Positions 18,100 to 60,855 of a stretch of DNA of 64,000 bases are shown here, one piece after another; the stretch's first letter is position 1, and the number at the start of each line of letters is the position of its first letter. Position numbers and translations under genes: made by a program. Source of the stretch: Lama glama (taxonomy: Eukaryota); the NCBI GenBank assembly GCA_028534125.1, contig CM052824.1, positions 60,698,001 through 60,762,000 on the forward strand. Direction: 5' to 3'. Under the pieces are notes generated by a model. The model was not told where the DNA came from. It made no database searches and worked only from the letters and a program-made list of their open reading frames with translations.

Positions 18100-18215
18100 T
18101 CGTCGTCGGGAGTCAGCTGCACCGGCTCGCTGGTGAACTGCGTATCGAAGTTGTCCAGACCGTAGTCGTCGGTAATCTGTGGCTGGAAGGGCGGGAGCGC
18201 CTGCTTCTTCCCCAG
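18100..18215 (-). CDS. PRKCZ: PRKCZ exon 17 ([39 protein letters not shown])
   Basis: AGC C-tail NFD motif and turn motif LTP. 116 nt with AG/GT boundaries. Confidence 0.96.
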
Positions 18216-20921: not shown

Positions 20922-21011
20922 CAGGTCCCAGTCTATGCTGCGGAAGAAGGCGTGAGACTTGATGTCAGAAAATCCAGTCTGTGGCCGGCAGCCGAGCCTC
21001 TCCTTCGGGTC
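20922..21011 (-). CDS. PRKCZ: PRKCZ exon 16 (DPKERLGCRPQTGFSDIKSHAFFRSIDWDL)
   Basis: Kinase subdomain XI. 90 nt with AG/GT boundaries. Confidence 0.97.
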
Positions 21012-21143
21012 CTGGGGGTCAGAGTTCAAACAATGACAAGTCAGCACAGAGCAAAGCAGCCCCCGCTTCACAGCTGGTGCCGGACAGGGAACTGGCCTGC
21101 CCTCCCAGTCACTTAAAGGCCTTAAACCATCACTCATCATAGA

Positions 21144-21224
21144 AATGCAGATCTCCGCAGCGCAGAACCTGGGGAGAGGGTGGCACCCATCCTGAGCGGA
21201 GAGAGCCCGACAAGGGACCTGGAC
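21144..21224 (-). repeat. Dispersed duplicate of the PRKCZ intron 11/exon 12 junction (source 23751-23831)
   Basis: Ungapped 81-bp alignment with 9 mismatches (72/81), same orientation. Confidence 0.93.
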
Positions 21225-21439
21225 AGATGCTGAGCTGCTTTGCTAAATTCCTCTCTGGAGTAATTTCTCGTCATCATGTTTTGTCTGGGGTGAGTAAACA
21301 TTCAAACCCACCCCCAAGATGTCCAGGAGCTGATACCGGAGATGACCAGGGGGTGGAGCCTGGGCCCGATGCACTGTGAGAAAGGGCTCCAGGCCGGCAG
21401 CCCCGGACGGCACGGCTGCCATGGTGGCTGAGAACGTAC

Positions 21440-21519
21440 CTTGTTTAGAAATCCTTTCAAGACGTGGGATGCCTTGACCGAGAGGAAGCGGGGAATCCGG
21501 ATGGGCTTCTCCAGGATGA
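21440..21519 (-). CDS. PRKCZ: PRKCZ exon 15 (VILEKPIRIPRFLSVKASHVLKGFLNK)
   Basis: aPKC RIPR motif. 80 nt with AG/GT boundaries. Confidence 0.97.
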
Positions 21520-22227
21520 CTGCAATGATTGCAGGCGGCGGTGGGAGCCCGTTTCTCCTCTGTGTGCCCCGCACCCTCCCCACTGGTCCCTCTGCCCAGC
21601 AGCCAAGGGGCTGGCCACCTGCAGGGCTCTTGGAATCCCCCACCAGGCAGGAGGGTTAAGCATTCCTGGTGCCCTGAAGCCCCCTTCCTTCACCCCGCAG
21701 GGTCTGCAGCCCTCAGAGGGCCCCCATGCACACGGTCACATGTGCCCATGCTCACGTTTGAACCAAGAGAGGCTCTGCTCGCCCTGCACCCCTGTGTCCG
21801 TGGGCACCAGAGGCACTGTGGGGACAGCTGGGGTTCTGGGGCTCAGTCTCCCAGGGTGGTCAATTCTGGCTCAGGGGCCTAGATGGCAAGAAGCCGCAAT
21901 GGTGGCTGGAAGGGGGCGGTGCCCTGGCTAAGCACAGCCCCCTGCCCAGGACTCTGGGGTGCACACCCGGTGCGGGTCGGCAGGGAGCTGGGCTACATCA
22001 GGACGGATTCTCTCTCCTGCTCGTGTGAAAAAGCAGTGCCCCCGCCCCATATTGTTTCCACCCCCACAACCCGGTCATGAGAACAGGCAGCCCCCGCCAG
22101 TCTGTGGTAGCCGCGGGGACCAGCCTGGGGGCGCTTTCTCCTGCTCCTCTGCAGGGGGAGAACCCACAGGGCGCGGGAAGAACTGGACACACAGACCAAG
22201 GGCGGCAGCCCTGAGCGGCCCACGCAC

Positions 22228-22347
22228 CTTGGAAAAGGTAGTCCTCGGTGTTCATGTCGGGGTTGTCGGTGATGATGTCGAAGGGGGAGCGGCCGGCCAT
22301 CATCTCGAACATCAGGACACCCAGGGCCCACCAGTCCACACTGAACC
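22228..22347 (-). CDS. PRKCZ: PRKCZ exon 14 ([40 protein letters not shown])
   Basis: Kinase subdomain IX. 120 nt with AG/GT boundaries. Confidence 0.97.
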
Positions 22348-22592
22348 CTGGAGGGGAGCGCAGGCCGTCACGCCGGGCGCGGGCCATGTGCAGCGGCCGC
22401 AGGATGGGCGTCTCCTGTTGTCCTGCCGGTCACCGGGCGGCAGGAGCCACGGTTTCCGTTTCTTGGACCAGAGCTGAGGGTGGGTGTCCCCCAGGCAGCC
22501 TGGCCCCGCCGTGTCTACTGTCCTGAGGACGCCTGTCTCTTAGCTAGCAGCCGGGCTGTGTCACGGCAGAGCCCCCGGGTAGACCAGCTGCC

Positions 22593-22715
22593 CCAAGAGT
22601 GCCCGGCCCTGTCCTCCTCCATCACACACGGGACCCCTGCCCCGGCAGGTTCTACCAAGAGTGCCCGGCCCTGTCCTCCTTCATCACACACGGGACCCCG
22701 CCCCGGCAGGTTCTA
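22593..22715. repeat. Two-copy ~62-bp tandem duplication in PRKCZ intron 13
   Basis: CCAAGAGTGCCCGGCCCTGTCCTCC..CCCCGGCAGGTTCTA at 22593-22654 and 22655-22715, with 1 substitution and 1 indel. Confidence 0.92.
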
Positions 22716-23203
22716 GACTCTGCTCTGGTCCACGGGGATAATGGCAAAGAAAATGTCTGGAAATATCTGATGGCATATTTGTGACACGCATCAACTGAAA
22801 ACAAGAGAACCCAAAACTGCGTGGGGTGTGCACACGTGCATACGTGTGCGCACACACGTGCATACACGCACGTTCTAATCTCACTCTCATTTCCCTCCTG
22901 GAGAAAGAAGGGCAGACGTGCTCCAGGGTCGGCGGGGCTGCAGGTGGTGCTGGCTGACCCACCTCTGTGGACAGTCACCGCCTGGCTCCTCCCACAGCCA
23001 CCGGGCACCGACCCTGGGTTCTGTCTTTGCTTCGTCCTCTCCTTCCCAAGCCCCTAGGGCTCTGTGATGAGAAGGATCCTGTCCAGTGACCTCCCCGGGG
23101 GACACTGAGGTGGACACACAGGACAACAGATGGGGACTGAGGCCAGATGGTGACATGGGGCTGGGAATGGAGTAAGGGTGTGTGTTTTAGTGTCACTTGG
23201 TCA

Positions 23204-24698
<1,495 letters not shown>

Positions 24699-25263
24699 GA
24701 GAGAGCATGAGTGTGTGGGGGCTACTCTTGATTTATTACCAGCCTTTCCCCCTGGAAAGATCTCTGGTGACTCACAACACTGCATGGAAGTATCTTCGAG
24801 TGAGGAAATGAGGAAAAGAGAAAAGTATGGAAAACAGGAAAGAGCGAGCCATGGAGTGGAAGTGAACGCCTACGAGGCCCGAGGCTGAGGAGGGGTGAGG
24901 ACGGGTCAGCTTCCTGAGAGCTCAAACGGTGGTCCTCATCCTCCCGCAACCAAGCAAACCCTGGCTGAGTGTCCCGGCGGGGCGGGGCGGGGCGGGGCGC
25001 GGCAGGACAGCCCCCTATGTCCACGCACGTCACTTTATAGTCGGAACTTCTCCCCATTTCGGAAACAGGGAAAAAGCCAACGCGGGACAGCGCCTTCCTG
25101 CACGCACACCCCCGTCTCTCTCGAGGGGGTCCGAGACCTTCCGGGCTCTGGCGGGTCACCTGGCAGGAGACGGCCGCGCCGCTCCCCACCCCCAGCCACC
25201 TCCCCAGACCCATCTCCCTTCCGACTCACCGCTGGGGCCCAGGGAAGGCCCGCCCCCACGCAC

Positions 25264-25350
25264 CTGGCGTGCTCCTCCGGAAGCTTCCTCTGCCTCTGCA
25301 TGTGGAACATGAGGTCACCCCCGTTCACGTACTCGATGACCAGAAACAAC
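25264..25350 (-). CDS. PRKCZ: PRKCZ exon 11 ([29 protein letters not shown])
   Basis: Kinase hinge. 87 nt, phase 2/2, AG/GT boundaries. Confidence 0.97.
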
Positions 25351-27829
25351 CTGGTGGCAGAGAGGGCCGAGGGGGCGGGGATCGCACGTGGCCACTCCAG
25401 GGAGAACCATGGGCCTGTCCTCTCTCGCGGGCGGTCACTCCTCCCAGAGGCCAGAAAGGCAGGGACCCAAGGCCGCCCACTCTGCCCCGAGGTCGGAGGG
25501 TATGGCTTAGCTCTGACCCCGACAGGGTCAAATTCAGAAGAGAAACTTTCACTTGGGCGTTCATTTCATCCAGCACAGTAATTTGCTCTCCCAATGGTGC
25601 AAGGCCTACCTTTGGGTAAAAAAAGGTACAAATAAGGCAGAGCTAGTGGCTGGAGGCCCCGTGGGGGTGGGGAGGGCGCTGTGTGGCCAGGGGGCTGCAG
25701 AAGCTCCCTAGGGAGCAGAGGCCTGAATGGTGGTGGGGGTGGGGGCTGCGAGACCACCTGGAGGCTCGGGGACCGGTCGTCAGAAGCCGGAAGGGCAGGC
25801 CCACGAGCCAGGTGAGGGGGATGACAACGTCTGGCAGTCGGATGACCACTCTGGCCGCTGTCTGTGTGGACCCCAGGGAGGGGAGGCAGTGCCCAGGTGA
25901 GAACACAGGTGGGGCGGCCGGGCGTCCAGGAGAAGAAAGGAGTGGGTGGGACCCCAGGTGGGACCTGGTGGCTGGAACCCTTCCCGAGCAGGGAGGACAG
26001 GGCAGGTCAGGAGCACTGACCAGCCACAGGAGGTCTGCGATGCCAGGCACCCCTCCTGGAGGAGGCCGGAGGGGCAGCAGGGGTCAGGGTGGGGCTGGCG
26101 TGGGGTCGCTGACATCTCCTGGACGCACACAGGGCCCTTCAGGTCTCCAAACAGTTCACCACGTGGTTAATTTCCTGATAAGCTCCTTCTCCCATTTAAT
26201 AAGGCTTCGTTTTCAAAATTAAATTCACACACAACTTTCCAGAAATACCCTGCTGAGGGCAGTTCGTGGATTTTAGGTCAACAGCTCCTCTGGGGCATCG
26301 TCAGCTCCATGGTGCCCCAGGCTGGGAGGGAGGTGGTGGGGGCACCCTGTAGGCTCCCTGGCCCCTCCAGCCCCTCCGGGTGCCAGGCCGTCTGCGTGGA
26401 GAGCCATCGGTGACACCCCGGACGGAGGGCAGAGGCCCCCTTTATACAGAGCAGGTGAACAAGCTGCAAACCACTCCCAAGTCCCACTGTGCATTTAGAC
26501 CAGAAACAAGCTCCTAAACATGTGAACAGCAGAGATGGAGACAGAAGCCTGAGCGCTGGGGGACAGCCAGAGACTCCTGGCCTGGAGGAACCCAGCTCGG
26601 CTGAGGAGGGCGGCCCCTCTGCTTGGAGAGGCTGCAGGAGCCAACCCTTCCATGGGCCCGCCTCTCTGTGAGTGAGTTTACTCTCATACGTCGTGCCTGC
26701 AGCTGCCTTCACGCAACAGCAGAGGTGAGAGATGGAACTTCACAGGCCTGGTGCAAACAGTGAGGACCAACGACAGCTGGACACTGACTGCCAGACACAT
26801 TCTGACACGTGCGCACGTTCAGTCCCGGCAGCCATCCTGGAGGAAGTGCTATGAAGGTCCTCAACCCCTGTGAAGAGGCCTCAGACCTCACAGTGAAAAA
26901 AAAAGCATTTATTCAAAACTCTGTGACTCCAAAGCCCGGGATGATATTGTCCACAATTACCAGGAACCACACTCCCTTCAGGCATCTGCCCGAGATGTTC
27001 ACCCAGAAAGGGGTGGTGGCCGCCCACGCAGGGACAGAAAGGAACATCACTCCAGAGAAAGGAGAGACACTGATGCTGGGGGACAACACCGACACAGCGT
27101 CCTGGGGGCAGAAAAGCCTCAAGGGGGCATTTAAGAGCCTAGAAAAGCAGACGCAACAGTAGTGCCTTTGTGCCCAGGGGACAGCCCGTCAAGGGGATTT
27201 TAAGAGCCGCATCCCTGTGAGGCGACACGGGGACCCTCGGCTGGTCCGCACGGGCTCCCGGGCTCCTAGGTCTCGGTAAGTCTCTGACCGGGGAACTCAT
27301 TTAATGTGCACCACGTTTGAGCTTCAAGAACAGGGCAGGACGTCTTTTCTTTTTAAAGCAGAAAGTCCTGTGTATCTAAGGGCTTTTTTTCTTCCGTTCT
27401 ACAGATCAGCGTTAGTACTACCGTCAACCATTCTTCTGAGCAAAACCCCAGCAGGGCCATCAGGTGCTGACTGACTCTGAGCACGTTGCTTTGTGTGACT
27501 CAGATGACCTGGCTGCTGTGACCAAACACCCAGAGGCCCAGGGCTGAGCTCCTCCATCTCGGGCCCCCGTGTCCTGGCACGCCAGCTCCCGGGTGGCATG
27601 GCCACAGCCCGCCTCCCCCCTGGCTCCCCGCTGTTCCCTCCCGCCCCTGACACCCCCGGCCCCTCGAGGTGCGAGCCGACAGTTTGGAACGCTAGCGTGG
27701 TTGGGTTCGGCTTCCCCGACACCAGGGCGGCCCGCGACAGCAGGCGCTGCACTCATAGCGTGGAGGCACTCCCTCGGGGTCGGGAAGGGCACAGGTGTGC
27801 CCACAACCCCCAGCCCCCAAACGCCGCAG

Positions 27830-33799: not shown

Positions 33800-33934
33800 C
33801 TGCAACAGAAGCCGGGGTGAGCGCCTCACAGGCATCCTGGGGAGGGGAGGCAGGAGAGGAATGCCTTTCAACTCTGCTCGAGGGAAGACAATGCAGAGAG
33901 GAGAAAACGCCCACTAAGAAACGCACCCCCGCAG

Positions 33935-34205
33935 CCATCACCATCTCCAGCACTTCGTCCATTATCACCTTCACCACCTTGACCACCAGCATCATCACCA
34001 CCATCCCCACCATCACACGCATCCCCGCCACGAACACCATCTCCAGCACTTCGTCCATTATCACCCGCCACCTTGACCACCAGCATCGTCCCCGCCACCA
34101 ACACCATCTCCAAGACCTCATCCATTATCACCCACCACCTTCACCAGCATCACTGTCCATCCTCTCATTATCCATCCTCTGTCACCATCTCTCCCACCAT
34201 CACCA
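33935..34205. repeat. CAC/CAT-rich compound tandem repeat
   Basis: (CAY)n-like low complexity, with a ~31-bp core CACCATCTCCAGCACTTCGTCCATTATCACC at 33939, 34035 and (diverged) 34102. Confidence 0.9.
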
Positions 34206-36089: not shown

Positions 36090-36460
36090 CCAGGACGGTG
36101 ATGATCAGAAACCAGAAAACAGCACGTACGGACAGGAATGAGCAGAAACCGGGACCCCGGGCGCTGCTGGGGGGAGTGTAAAATGGCGCAGCTGCTGTTA
36201 AACAGACTCACCCTGTGACTCACAGTCCTGCTCCTAGGAAAAAACCCAGAGGACCTGGGGACACTTGTGCCCGGACGCTCACGGCAGCAGAGTCACACGA
36301 GCCAAAAGGTGGAAGCAGCCCCGTGCCGAAAAGCGGATGAACAGATAAGCCACACGGGGTGTGCCATGACATGGAGTGTTCTTGAGGCAGGAAAAACGGG
36401 CAAGGGCACATGGATGCTTGCTGCCACGTGGGTGAACCCCAAGCCGTGATGCTCAGTGCG
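36090..36460 (+). mobile_element. Decayed L1 3' fragment
   Basis: AACAGCACGTAC..GAATGAGCAGAAACCGGGACCC..TGCTGGGGGAGTGTAAAATGGCGCAGC and AAAAGGTGGAAGCAGCCC..GATGAACAGATAAGC. Confidence 0.7.
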
Positions 36461-55619: not shown

Positions 55620-58600
55620 AAAAAAAAAAAAAAAGCCAGGAAGGGATTTTTGGCTGATTCATGGGGCTGAGGAGACAAAAGCTGGAGATCGGGGTCCCAG
55701 TGACCCCCAGATCTTTCCAGCTGTGATACAGAAAGACACGAAAGGATACTGAAAACTGTAAGCCTCCAGTGAATCCAGGTGACATGTCCACATTCCAGCT
55801 GCCAGGATAAAATCGAATCCTCTCACGAGGAAAATAACACCGTTCAGGGCTCCTGCCGCTTTTCAAACACAGTGTCTGATGTTCAGCAAAAAAGGAAAAA
55901 GTAAATACCAGGCAGGCCAAGAAGTAGAAGCATTTGACTAAACAGCCAATAGAAACGGACTCACGGGAGGCTCAGGTATCAAACTATACTTAGAAGGTCA
56001 GGTCAGGTCTCACCAGGGAGCTGGACCTATGAAAAGCAAGGAATCAAATTCTAAAAATCCTAGGACTTTGGAAATCCTAAAAGTGAAACTAGTAACTGAT
56101 ATTAACAATTCAGGAGACAGACTTAGGAGCAGGTGAGACAAAGTAAGAGGCGGCTGTAGAGAAGCCCAGAGGGGCCAGGACGGAGAGAAGCACCGAAGAC
56201 GGCAGGGGGCACCCAGACAAGGAGGGGGGCACCCAGACGGCAGGCGGCACCTGGATGAGGAGGAGGGCAGCCAGACGGCAGGGGGCACCTAGACAGCAGG
56301 GGGGCACCTAGACGAGAAGGAGGGTACCCAGACGGCAGGGGGGCACCTAGACGGCAGGGGGGCACCTAGACGAGAAGGAGGGTACCCAGATGGCAGGGGG
56401 ACACCTAGACGAGAAGGAGGGTACCCAGACGGCAGGGGGGCACCCAGACGGCAGGGGGCACCTAGACGGCAGGGGGGCACCTAGACGAGAAGGAGGGCAC
56501 CTAGATGGCAGGGGGCACCCAGACAAGGGAAAAAGCCGGGGCAGGGGGAGGGGGCAGGGCAGCACCTGCGAGGACACTGCTGTATTTTAGAAAAGAGACA
56601 GAAGACATTGTGCCCAGATCCAGAAAGCTCTATGAACCTCAGCTGGGATAAATTCAGCATGTCCTCCTCTTCTGCAAGCCTGCTGAAATAGAAGGACAGA
56701 GGCCATTTTCAAGGCAGCTGAGGAGAAAGAAACGCATCACCTCCGGGGGCCAGAGAGGACGTGTCAGGGGTGCGGAGAGGTCACTGCCCACCGAGACCCC
56801 ACCCGGACGAATGTCCTCAAAAACGAAGGCAAGAGGAAGACGCCTGCACAGAAGCAAATCGGCCACTTGCCAGCAAGTCTGCGCCCAGGAACTGCCGCAG
56901 GAGCCTTTTGGGGAGGGAGGTGGTCCCGGAGGGAAGCGCCCCCGGCGTTGCGAGGGGGTCCGAACGAACGCCTGTGCAGAGCAAAGGGACCACGGGACCG
57001 TGGGACGTGAAATGTGAACAGAAACCACACATGTGCCAACAGCAAAAAACCAACAAGGGGGTCACACGGCTGAAGGGGTCTAAGCTCCCTGCCTCACCTG
57101 GAAAACAGTGGAAGCAGTGACTCAAGGTCGTTCCAAGAATGTGCCGTGATTTCTAAGGCAGCCAGAACGTGAAAAACAAAGTTACATACTACTTAACAAA
57201 GCTAATAAAAGGCGGGCGGAGGGATGGAAAAATAGCACTTGATTAGACCAAAGGAAGGCGGGCCAGAAGAAAGAATGGTGTGGCCGATTATAAAGTACAC
57301 AGCAAGATGACAGATTTAGCAGCAACTCGTCAGTATGATGTTAAATGTAACCGAATTAAACGCTTTAGTTAAAAGACAGGGATTGTCAGACCAGGTGAAA
57401 AACAACTACCTTCTTGTTTATAAGAGCCATTTCCAAAATACGATACAGAAAAACTGAAAGTAAAGGGATGGAAAAAACACACACATGAACACTAAGCTCC
57501 CCTCGCCCTGCATGTAGTCAGCCATGTTAATACCAGCAGAGGAGACTTCAACGTTAAAAACACTTCTTATCTCGAAGAGCAGCATTTCACGATGATAGAA
57601 GTGCTGGTTCAAAAGGAAGACAGTGATCCTAAATCTGTGTGCACTCAACACAGCACGAAATACATGGAGAACAAAATTACAAGGAGAAAGATAAATCCCC
57701 AAGAGTTTAGTATCTACAGATGTTAAAGTTCTTTTAAAAGACAATAGAAGTGTGAACTACGTCAGTAAGTGTGATTTAGACCTTGGAACAGCCTGAACAT
57801 CACAACTTACTGAGGGTGACGAAAGAAATACACAGTCTGAGTAGCTGGATTTGTATCTTAAAAATCAGCCCTTGGACCTGACACATTCCCATAAAGGAGA
57901 CTCGAAGCTCACAGGCTTTACTGGGGAAGTCTTCCAAATAATCAGCAGAAACGGTATCAATCTTACATAAACCTTCCCAAGAACTTAAAAAAGCTCAGTT
58001 AATTTTATAAGGCCAACGTGTACCCCCATGTTTAACTCTGAAAACATTACAAAGAAAGAACATTAGAGTCAATCTCGCTCATAAACGTAGCTGCAAAAAT
58101 ACCAGACAAATACCAGCAAACTGCGTCCAGCAGAATGCAGAAAGGAAGACACACTGCGACCAAGCGCATGCCCTAAGGGAATCCGGGGCCGGTGCTGCCC
58201 GCAGAGCCAGTCAGCACAGCTCGCCTCGCTGACGGGATAGCAACGTGTGTTAAGAGGTGAGGGGAAAAAAGCGGCGGATAAAATTCTGCACCGCGCAGGA
58301 TAAAACGCTCACCCAGGAGGAAAACAGAACCTCCTAAGTTTGACGATGAAACTGTGAAAACCTTCTACTGAGATCGAGAACCGCCTCTGCCCCACGATGG
58401 TTCAGGAAGACAAGCAGGGCCAGCGCTACAAGGCAGCAGATGAAGGTTTGGAAAAGTGACAGTAAAAGCCGCTCACTGGCGAAGCGGTGGTGTGTACAGG
58501 AAACCCAGCAGAGCGTGCACACAGAGCACTGGGGTTAGTACGTGAGTTTACCGAGGCCGCAGGACCAGAGTTCTGCATGAGCAATTCACTGCACCTCTCC

Positions 58601-60355: not shown

Positions 60356-60855
60356 NNNNNNNNNNNNNNNNNNNNNNNNNNNNNNNNNNNNNNNNNNNNN
60401 NNNNNNNNNNNNNNNNNNNNNNNNNNNNNNNNNNNNNNNNNNNNNNNNNNNNNNNNNNNNNNNNNNNNNNNNNNNNNNNNNNNNNNNNNNNNNNNNNNNN
60501 NNNNNNNNNNNNNNNNNNNNNNNNNNNNNNNNNNNNNNNNNNNNNNNNNNNNNNNNNNNNNNNNNNNNNNNNNNNNNNNNNNNNNNNNNNNNNNNNNNNN
60601 NNNNNNNNNNNNNNNNNNNNNNNNNNNNNNNNNNNNNNNNNNNNNNNNNNNNNNNNNNNNNNNNNNNNNNNNNNNNNNNNNNNNNNNNNNNNNNNNNNNN
60701 NNNNNNNNNNNNNNNNNNNNNNNNNNNNNNNNNNNNNNNNNNNNNNNNNNNNNNNNNNNNNNNNNNNNNNNNNNNNNNNNNNNNNNNNNNNNNNNNNNNN
60801 NNNNNNNNNNNNNNNNNNNNNNNNNNNNNNNNNNNNNNNNNNNNNNNNNNNNNNN
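60356..60855. other. Assembly gap (500 N)
   Basis: Run of exactly 500 N. Confidence 0.99.

What the first reader, a model, noticed from the sequence alone, without database searches (positions are those of the whole stretch)
21012..21224. Duplicated exon-12 splice acceptor in PRKCZ intron 15, with an open frame into exon 16: candidate kinase-dead isoform
Seen: 21144-21224 is an ungapped 72/81 copy of 23751-23831 (56 nt of intron 11 plus the first 25 nt of exon 12), in the same orientation and 2.6 kb downstream in the transcript. The pyrimidine tract and CAG|G are intact, so a pseudo-exon would start at 21168. In exon-12 phase the 157 nt to exon 16 have no stop: R-FCAAEICISMMSDGLRPLSDWEGRPVPCPAPAVKRGLLCSVLTCHCLNSDPQ-DPKERLG. 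Inference: splicing exon 11 to this site would swap exons 12-15 (424 nt) for 157 nt, a net in-frame loss of 89 aa. That removes [11 protein letters not shown] and the activation loop but keeps the regulatory domain, N-lobe and C-tail, giving a potential dominant-negative or scaffold aPKC/PKMzeta. The in-frame match may be chance: 1 in 3 for phase, and stops are rare in GC-rich DNA.
Basis: partly seen in the sequence, partly recalled or inferred. Interest (0 to 1): 0.75.

Follow-up and report, generated by a model that had tools for sequence, protein, structure and literature searches.

The report
Copied splice acceptor inside PRKCZ intron
An 81-base piece spanning the start of one kinase exon has been copied into a later intron of the same gene, where it most likely sits as a harmless leftover that at most creates a rarely used false splice site.

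Summary
Window 21144-21224 is an ungapped 72 of 81 direct copy of 23751-23831, which is 56 nt of intron plus the first 25 nt of the exon reading FYAAEICI. BLAST gives E = 3.7e-25. It is the only dispersed high-identity repeat in the 64 kb.

The isoform reading could not be tested. Inference argues against it:
- It needs four constitutive exons to be skipped.
- Joined to the exon 12-15 donors, the copied site meets a stop within 10-12 codons.
- The open frame is what 9-30% of comparable sequence gives.
- One change in the copy removes both branch-point-like motifs of the parent.
- The loss would remove Pkinase profile positions from 102 to at least 206 of 263.

Best reading: a neutral, roughly 10-60 My old templated insertion, with no target-site duplication or poly(A), that forms cryptic acceptors. 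Interest is low.

The parts
21144..21224 (-). The copy: 81 nt in intron 15. 56 nt derive from the 3' end of intron 11 and 25 nt from the start of exon 12.
   Evidence: 72 of 81 identical to 23751-23831. E = 3.7e-25. 8 transitions and 1 transversion.
23751..23831 (-). The parent: the last 56 nt of intron 11 plus the first 25 nt of exon 12 (the exon starts at 23775).
   Evidence: The exon 12 peptide matches Pkinase positions 102-146 at E = 3.3e-15.
21012..21168 (-).
   Evidence: Stop-free only after a phase-2 donor. No Pfam match for its 52-aa translation.
21169..21193 (-). Two candidate cryptic acceptors inside the copy. One AG is at 21170-21169 (first exon base 21168, copied from the parent). 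The other AG is at 21193-21192 (first exon base 21191, created by the T>G difference at 21192).
   Evidence: both are CAG|G with a pyrimidine fraction of 0.72; from the exon 15 donor, 21168 gives a stop after 12 codons, while 21191 gives a stop-free in-frame 180 nt.
21012..21242 (-). The whole stop-free frame, 77 codons, leading into exon 16. The upstream stop TAG is at 21245-21243.
25264..25350 (-). Exon 11, 87 nt. The donor follows 25264, phase 2.
   Evidence: Weak Pkinase match at positions 75-99, E = 0.12.
23640..23775 (-). Exon 12, 136 nt: catalytic loop and the DYG motif.
   Evidence: The top 10 PDB rows are all protein kinase C iota, and the alignment shown is 39 of 45 identical.
23386..23473 (-). 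Exon 13, 88 nt: activation segment.
   Evidence: Pkinase positions 151-174, E = 1.5e-4.
22228..22347 (-). Exon 14, 120 nt.
   Evidence: Pkinase positions 177-206, E = 5.5e-6.
21440..21519 (-). Exon 15, 80 nt, phase-0 donor. Intron 15 is 21439-21012 (428 nt).
   Evidence: No Pfam match on its own.
21006..21011 (-). The first six bases of exon 16, after the authentic acceptor. The rest of the exon was left out of all searches.
   Evidence: The authentic acceptor has a pyrimidine fraction of 0.67 and a CTGAC motif at -30.

Best explanation
Origin. An 81-nt patch was copied into intron 15 of the same gene, 2.6 kb downstream and on the same strand. Its template was the intron 11/exon 12 boundary, either as DNA or as unspliced PRKCZ pre-mRNA. 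The likely occasion was repair of a break or a replication template switch. This is a templated insertion. It probably happened tens of millions of years ago, and the copy has since drifted.

Effect. The patch brought a competent-looking pyrimidine tract and a CAG|G, so the intron now holds one copied cryptic 3' splice site (21168) and one newly made one (21191). Most likely these sites are used rarely or never. If 21168 is used, its expected partner is the neighbouring exon 15 donor. That gives a transcript with a premature stop, which would be degraded or would encode a kinase without its C-tail. It would not give the in-frame exon 11 product.

Shown: the copy, its sharp ends, the splice-site anatomy, the frames, the substitution pattern, and the absence of retrotransposition marks. 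Inferred: the insertion mechanism, the age, the low usage and the neutrality.
For: - Sharp-edged 72 of 81 copy with chance-level flanks and no gapped extension. It is the only dispersed repeat above 80% identity in the window.
- It spans an intron-exon boundary, so it is not from spliced mRNA.
- The two 40-nt flanks share no k-mer of 5 or more, there is no poly(A), and there is no extra identity at either junction. That fits class 2 templated sequence insertions as described in PMC5110952 (passages read).
- Divergence looks neutral. There are 8 transitions and 1 transversion, K2P 0.124. The intron-derived part has 7 of 56 changed and the exon-derived part 2 of 25, including a Tyr>Cys change.
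- Both branch-point-like motifs of the parent, CTCAT at -25 and TGAC at -22, are altered in the copy by the single T>G change at 21192.
- Every donor from exon 12 to exon 15 meets a stop within 10-12 codons at 21168.
- The open frame occurs in 9-30% of comparable sequence.
- The pseudo-exon peptide has no Pfam match and the region has no Rfam family.
Against:
- The 23 bases usually scored for a 3' splice site (20 intron plus 3 exon) differ from a working acceptor at only 2 positions. One of these is a C>T change within the tract, so the site could be strong.
- The stop-free frame is 77 codons long and is also in frame with exon 15 through 21191. That is a second coincidence.
- No microhomology was found at the junctions, so the repair mechanism is not positively supported.
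- No outgroup was available, so insertion cannot be told from other histories, and the changes cannot be assigned to copy or parent.
- The age rests on 9 differences (95% Poisson interval 4.1-17.1) and on recalled mammalian substitution rates.
Confidence: 0.7

Rival explanations
1. The exon 11 donor is spliced to 21168, skipping exons 12-15. The result is an in-frame protein that lacks the catalytic loop, DYG and the activation segment, carries 52 new residues, and acts as a dominant-negative or scaffold aPKC.
For: The arithmetic holds: 424 - 157 = 267 nt, and the stretch is stop-free in phase 2. The acceptor core is nearly identical to a working one. Kinase-independent roles of PRKCZ-encoded isoforms are reported for aPKC-zeta III in PMC13385426 (passages read).
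Against: - It requires four exons with ordinary splice sites to be skipped.
- The open frame and the phase match are jointly about a 3-10% chance event (times one third).
- The branch-point motifs are lost, and there is a Tyr>Cys change in the copied coding part.
- Pkinase profile positions from 102 to at least 206 of 263 would be lost, so the kinase fold could not form (inference).
- No such isoform appeared in the papers listed.
- No RNA evidence could be obtained.
Confidence: 0.04
2. The copied acceptor, or the new one at 21191, is used at a real level from the exon 15 donor. At 21168 the product is a poison extension with a stop after 12 codons, which lowers PRKCZ output through nonsense-mediated decay. 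At 21191 it is an in-frame 60-residue insertion in the C-lobe.
For: - Both sites are CAG|G with a pyrimidine fraction of 0.72. The authentic exon 16 acceptor has 0.67.
- Both lie upstream of the CTGAC at -30, the authentic acceptor's likely branch point.
- The extended exon would stay under about 275 nt.
- The frames are given.
Against: - No RNA data.
- No yTnAy motif lies within 40 nt upstream of 21168.
- Heavy use would cut the output of a conserved kinase and should be selected against (inference).
- No splice predictor was installed.
Confidence: 0.2
3. Relic of an old tandem duplication of exon 12, that is, a former mutually exclusive exon that has decayed.
For: Same gene, same strand, and it includes the acceptor and the exon start.
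Against: - Only 25 of 136 exon nt are present, and identity stops abruptly.
- It is not adjacent to exon 12. Three exons lie between.
- The intron-derived part is still 49 of 56 identical, which an ancient duplicate would not keep.
- No donor site follows the copy before exon 16's own.
Confidence: 0.02
4. Assembly artefact: the 81 nt were misplaced during assembly.
For: None directly.
Against: The copy differs from the parent at 9 positions and sits in unique sequence with no gap nearby. The only N run is 60356-60855. Six DNA-like runs hold 0.84-0.88 of the words of the surrounding 4.5 kb.
Confidence: 0.02

Closest known systems
Class 2 templated sequence insertions (TSI/TSIP; PMC5110952, passages read)
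   Same: A short patch copied from elsewhere, with no target-site duplication of 5 nt or more, no poly(A) and no cryptic poly(A) signal context. A template made of unspliced transcript would explain an intron-exon boundary copied in sense orientation.
   Different: The template lies only 2.6 kb away in the same gene, whereas the paper describes distant templates. No microhomology or untemplated bases can be recognised at the junctions. Insertion is not proven without an outgroup. A replication template switch (recalled: FoSTeS/MMBIR) would fit equally well.
Intronic cryptic or decoy 3' splice sites and pseudo-exons
   Same: AG plus a pyrimidine tract inside an intron, upstream of the authentic acceptor. 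From the adjacent donor it predicts a frameshift and an early stop.
   Different: Here the site did not arise by point mutation. It was imported ready-made from a working acceptor of the same gene, together with 25 nt of exon. Its use is unknown.
Tandem exon duplication giving mutually exclusive exons (recalled: Kondrashov and Koonin 2001; Letunic et al. 2002; neither read here)
   Same: An exon-derived duplicate with its acceptor, in the same gene and on the same strand.
   Different: Only the first 25 of 136 exon nt are present, there is no donor of its own, it is not adjacent to the parent, and length and phase are not preserved.
Known PRKCZ isoforms: PKMzeta; aPKC-zeta III (PMC13385426); PRKC-zeta-PrC (PMC3394965); mouse PKCzetaII (recalled, seen only as a word hit in the counts)
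   Same: Same gene. Some are proposed to act without full kinase activity. PRKC-zeta-PrC involves exonised intron sequence in the 3' part of the human gene.
   Different: aPKC-zeta III is an N-terminal truncation that keeps the kinase domain. PRKC-zeta-PrC is a tumour-associated 3' exonisation. None replaces exons 12-15 by an intron-derived segment. Supplements of these papers were not seen.

Membership tests
Atypical protein kinase C gene (PRKCZ) | Exons encode a protein kinase domain of the AGC/PKC type. | tested here: met
   4 of the 5 real exon peptides match Pkinase in collinear profile order (75-99, 102-146, 151-174, 177-206). Only exon 12 passes the curated cut-off by itself; the top 10 PDB rows for exon 12 are all protein kinase C iota.
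Atypical protein kinase C gene (PRKCZ) | It is the zeta rather than the iota paralogue. | tested here: inconclusive
   Exon 12 is 39 of 45 identical to iota in the alignment shown, so it is not iota itself. No zeta kinase-domain chain was listed. Two unchecked scan notes place SKI and a PRKCZ 5' leader on either side. The C-terminal exons were found at about 18200-17881. The zeta assignment otherwise rests on recall.
Functional alternative 3' splice site | AG preceded by a pyrimidine tract. | tested here: met
   CAG|G with a pyrimidine fraction of 0.72 and a longest run of 10, equal to the parent acceptor.
Functional alternative 3' splice site | A recognisable branch point 18-40 nt upstream. 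| tested here: inconclusive
   no yTnAy motif lies within 40 nt. Only TCAG at -25 remains, whereas the parent has CTCAT at -25 and TGAC at -22. Branch points are degenerate, and no predictor was available.
Functional alternative 3' splice site | Junction reads in RNA. | not testable with these tools
Its cap is one call.
Functional alternative 3' splice site | Site and frame conserved in related species. | not testable with these tools
   No collection of mammalian genomes is on hand.
Tandem exon duplication / mutually exclusive exon | A whole exon with both splice sites, adjacent to its parent, of the same length and phase. | tested here: not met
   Only 25 of 136 exon nt are present, three exons intervene, and there is no donor of its own.
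LINE-1-mediated (class 1) templated insertion or retrocopy | Target-site duplication of at least 5 bp and a poly(A) tail. | tested here: not met
   the two 40-nt flanks share no k-mer of 5-9, and the sequence after the copy is not A-rich.
Break-repair (class 2) templated insertion | A sharp-edged patch without target-site duplication or poly(A), and a template that still exists elsewhere. | tested here: met
   The template is at 23751-23831.
Break-repair (class 2) templated insertion | End-joining marks at the junctions (microhomology, untemplated bases), and an empty site in an outgroup. | tested here: inconclusive
   zero extra identity at either junction. The only feature is a 3-nt TCT on both sides, which is not significant. 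No outgroup was available.

The most novel reading that the evidence does not exclude
The imported acceptor is really used in this lineage. The other is a lineage-specific poison extension or a 60-residue insertion made from the exon 15 donor. Either way, a repair patch copied from the gene's own pre-mRNA would have given an atypical PKC a new, regulated, kinase-independent or output-tuning isoform.
Probability: 0.05. Interest if true: 0.55.

Novelty: new member of a known kind. Interest (0 to 1): 0.17.

Why it matters
As it stands, this is a clear example of a working splice acceptor moving within a gene as a short templated patch. That is one way for introns to gain ready-made cryptic splice sites without point mutation.

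It would matter more if RNA data showed use of the site. PRKCZ isoforms with reduced or absent kinase activity are of current interest (PMC13385426), and a lineage-specific isoform lacking the catalytic core would be a natural dominant-negative. Without junction reads or conservation data this is only a possibility, and the sequence features computed here point towards a neutral relic.

Tried and rejected
Longer duplication. Ungapped extension and gapped blastn found nothing beyond the 81 nt. A 21-nt match, 21227-21246 to 24094-24114, is at a different offset with E = 0.28 and was taken as chance.

Intronic snoRNA. ATGATGA motifs lie on both sides of the copy, which suggested C/D boxes. Rfam at E <= 1 over 21006-25500 gave 2 matches, both far below their gathering scores (24.6 against 85, and 24.4 against 90). 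Both lie in a TG/CA-rich stretch at 22818-22887 and neither is in intron 15. Rejected.

Retrotransposition. There is no target-site duplication of 5 nt or more and no poly(A). Rejected.

Quantitative splice scoring. No MaxEntScan, SpliceAI or similar module is installed. I compared pyrimidine content, AG positions and branch-point-like motifs with the gene's own six acceptors instead.

Public predicted proteins. I ran no search for proteins carrying the pseudo-exon peptide. The search for homologous proteins sees only proteins of 0.55-1.75 times the query length.

Joined model. The joined exon 11 / pseudo-exon / exon 16 protein was not built, searched or folded.

Literature. Searches looked for PRKCZ isoforms. 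Searches looked for templated insertions and cryptic splice sites. I read passages of PMC3394965, PMC13385426 and PMC5110952, and only the search listings of the other papers. No paper describing an exon 12-15 replacement isoform appeared in these searches. That is a weak negative. Supplements were closed and may list further transcript variants.

Full report
WHAT IS THERE

On the minus strand the window carries the 3' half of an atypical protein kinase C gene. I located the exons from the ORF translations and read their boundaries from the sequence:

| Exon | Coordinates | Length |
|---|---|---|
| 11 | 25350-25264 | 87 nt |
| 12 | 23775-23640 | 136 nt |
| 13 | 23473-23386 | 88 nt |
| 14 | 22347-22228 | 120 nt |
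| 15 | 21519-21440 | 80 nt |

- Intron 15 is 21439-21012 and exon 16 starts at 21011.
- Two further coding exons follow, near 18200 and at about 17970-17881.
- Searched one by one against Pfam, exons 11-14 match the Pkinase profile in collinear order: positions 75-99, 102-146, 151-174 and 177-206 of 263. Exon 15 and the pseudo-exon peptide match nothing (4 of 6 peptides matched).
- For exon 12 the top 10 PDB rows are all protein kinase C iota, and the alignment shown is 39 of 45 identical. So the gene is an atypical PKC that is not iota.
- Two unchecked notes of this scan place SKI and a PRKCZ leader on either side of the window. That agrees with PRKCZ.

THE OBSERVATION

- 21144-21224 is an ungapped, same-strand, 72 of 81 copy of 23751-23831.
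- The parent is the last 56 nt of intron 11 plus the first 25 nt of exon 12.
- Outside the 81 nt, identity falls to chance: 14 of 44, 8 of 36 and 20 of 76. blastn finds no gapped continuation.
- Within the window the match has E = 3.7e-25, while the next best match of intron 15 has E = 0.081.
- A comparison of the window with itself yields only 7 non-self hits at E <= 1e-6. Five belong to tandem arrays and one is a 75% identical, 99-nt pair. This is the only dispersed repeat above 80% identity.

- Exons 12-15 sum to 424 nt.
- The stretch from the copied CAG|G (first base 21168) to 21012 is 157 nt.
- 424 - 157 = 267 nt, or 89 codons.

WHAT THE ISOFORM READING NEEDS, AND WHAT COULD BE TESTED

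The decisive test is junction reads.

- One search found 24 runs. Twenty hold the stretch or part of it. Six DNA-like runs of one organism label hold 0.84-0.88 of the words. Seven runs are on record as RNA, with shares of 0.22 or less.
- No reads were laid, so I have no RNA evidence for or against any junction.
- No mammalian genome collection is available here, so conservation could not be tested either.
- Everything below is sequence-based inference.

FRAMES

- Only a phase-2 donor gives the open frame.
- From the exon 12 or exon 15 donors (phase 0), 21168 leads to a stop after 12 codons. From the exon 13 or 14 donors (phase 1), the stop comes after 10.
- The donor that normally pairs across this intron is exon 15's. 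The most probable product of any use of 21168 is therefore a frameshifted message with an early stop.

HOW SPECIAL IS THE OPEN FRAME?

- 762 of 3033 (25%) 159-nt frames in introns 11-15 are open.
- 18761 of 62933 (30%) are open across the whole minus strand.
- 463 of 5000 (9%) dinucleotide shuffles of the 157 nt are open.
- The first nine codons are open by descent from exon 12.
- With the one-in-three chance of matching phase, the joint coincidence is roughly 3-10%. That is unremarkable for one item picked out of a genome scan.
- The stop-free frame in fact runs for 77 codons, from 21242.

SPLICE SIGNALS

- The copy keeps the parent's tract. The pyrimidine fraction is 0.72 and the longest run is 10 in both.
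- Within the last 20 intron bases plus 3 exon bases, the copy differs from the parent at two positions. One is a C>T change inside the tract.
- The branch-point region has changed. The parent has CTCAT with its A at -25 and TGAC with its A at -22. The copy has neither.
- The T>G transversion at 21192 alone removes the pyrimidine after the first A and the T two bases before the second.
- The same change creates a second CAG|G, whose first exon base is 21191.
- Joined to the exon 15 donor, that site would add 180 nt in frame without a stop. It is as untested as the rest.

ORIGIN AND AGE

- The copy spans an intron-exon boundary, so spliced mRNA was not the template.
- The two 40-nt flanks share no k-mer of 5 or more, no poly(A) follows, and there is no extra identity at either junction.
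- That excludes the marks of LINE-1-mediated insertion. It fits the class 2 templated sequence insertions described in PMC5110952: patches without target-site duplication or poly(A), attributed to break repair, possibly from reverse-transcribed RNA (passages read).
- A replication template switch over 2.6 kb is an equally good candidate (recalled concept). The present sequence does not discriminate, because no microhomology is visible.
- The nine differences are 8 transitions and 1 transversion, giving K2P 0.124.
- Two differences lie in CpG context. The adjacent CA/TG pair at 21189-21188 looks like two decays of an ancestral CpG (inference).
- At recalled mammalian rates of 1-2.2e-9 per site per year, the distance gives 28-62 My. 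CpG decay inflates this, and with 9 events the interval is wide (4.1-17.1 expected differences). I therefore put the age at roughly 10-60 My.
- Divergence is 7 of 56 in the intron-derived part and 2 of 25 in the exon-derived part. That is what a freely drifting copy predicts when only the parent's exon is constrained. One of the two exon-part changes turns Tyr into Cys.

- Exons 12-14 map to Pkinase positions 102-206 of 263. Exon 15 gave no Pfam match of its own, so how far beyond 206 the loss runs was not measured.
- Exons 12-13 contain the catalytic-loop and DYG motifs and the activation segment.
- From general knowledge of the kinase fold, these exons also contain the central helices of the C-lobe.
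- I therefore expect an unfolded kinase remnant, not a tidy N-lobe plus C-tail. Only the N-terminal regulatory region, which lies outside this window, would remain as a functional module.
- I did not build or fold the joined model.

KNOWN PRKCZ ISOFORMS

- aPKC-zeta III is an N-terminal truncation that keeps the kinase domain. It is proposed to act largely without kinase activity (PMC13385426, passages).
- PRKC-zeta-PrC involves exonised intron sequence in the 3' part of the human gene in prostate cancer (PMC3394965, passages).
- PKMzeta and mouse PKCzetaII are recalled.
- No paper listed or 31 describes a replacement of exons 12-15.

VERDICT

- The isoform is an untested possibility that the sequence evidence makes unlikely.
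- The best-supported account is a neutral templated insertion that imported a splice acceptor into intron 15 and is now decaying.
- The chance that one of the two cryptic sites is detectably used from the exon 15 donor is moderate.

Noticed in passing
window 21191-21193: The T>G difference at 21192 in the copy creates a second CAG|G. Joined to the exon 15 donor it would add 180 nt in frame and without a stop, a 60-residue insertion in the C-lobe. The stop-free frame runs for 77 codons, 21242-21012.
   Followed up: partly
window 22593-22715: A tandem duplication of a 62-nt unit in intron 13: 2.0 copies with 96% matches.
   Followed up: no
window 56197-56528: A G-rich minisatellite with nested periods of 19, 39, 58 and 115 nt and 76-85% matches.
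   Followed up: no
window 22818-22887: A TG/CA-rich stretch gives sub-threshold Rfam matches to mir-466 (24.6 bits against a gathering score of 85) and mir-297 (24.4 against 90). Taken as chance.
   Followed up: partly
window 24024-24121 and 36113-36208: A dispersed 99-nt pair, 75% identical, same orientation, E = 2.5e-8. Possibly fragments of an old interspersed repeat.
   Followed up: no
window 33927-33994 and 34090-34152: A local 68-nt repeat, 82% identical, 163 nt apart.
   Followed up: no
whole window: The window has very few internal repeats. Only 7 non-self hits at E <= 1e-6 appear in a 64-kb self-comparison. There is one 500-nt N run at 60356-60855.
   Followed up: no
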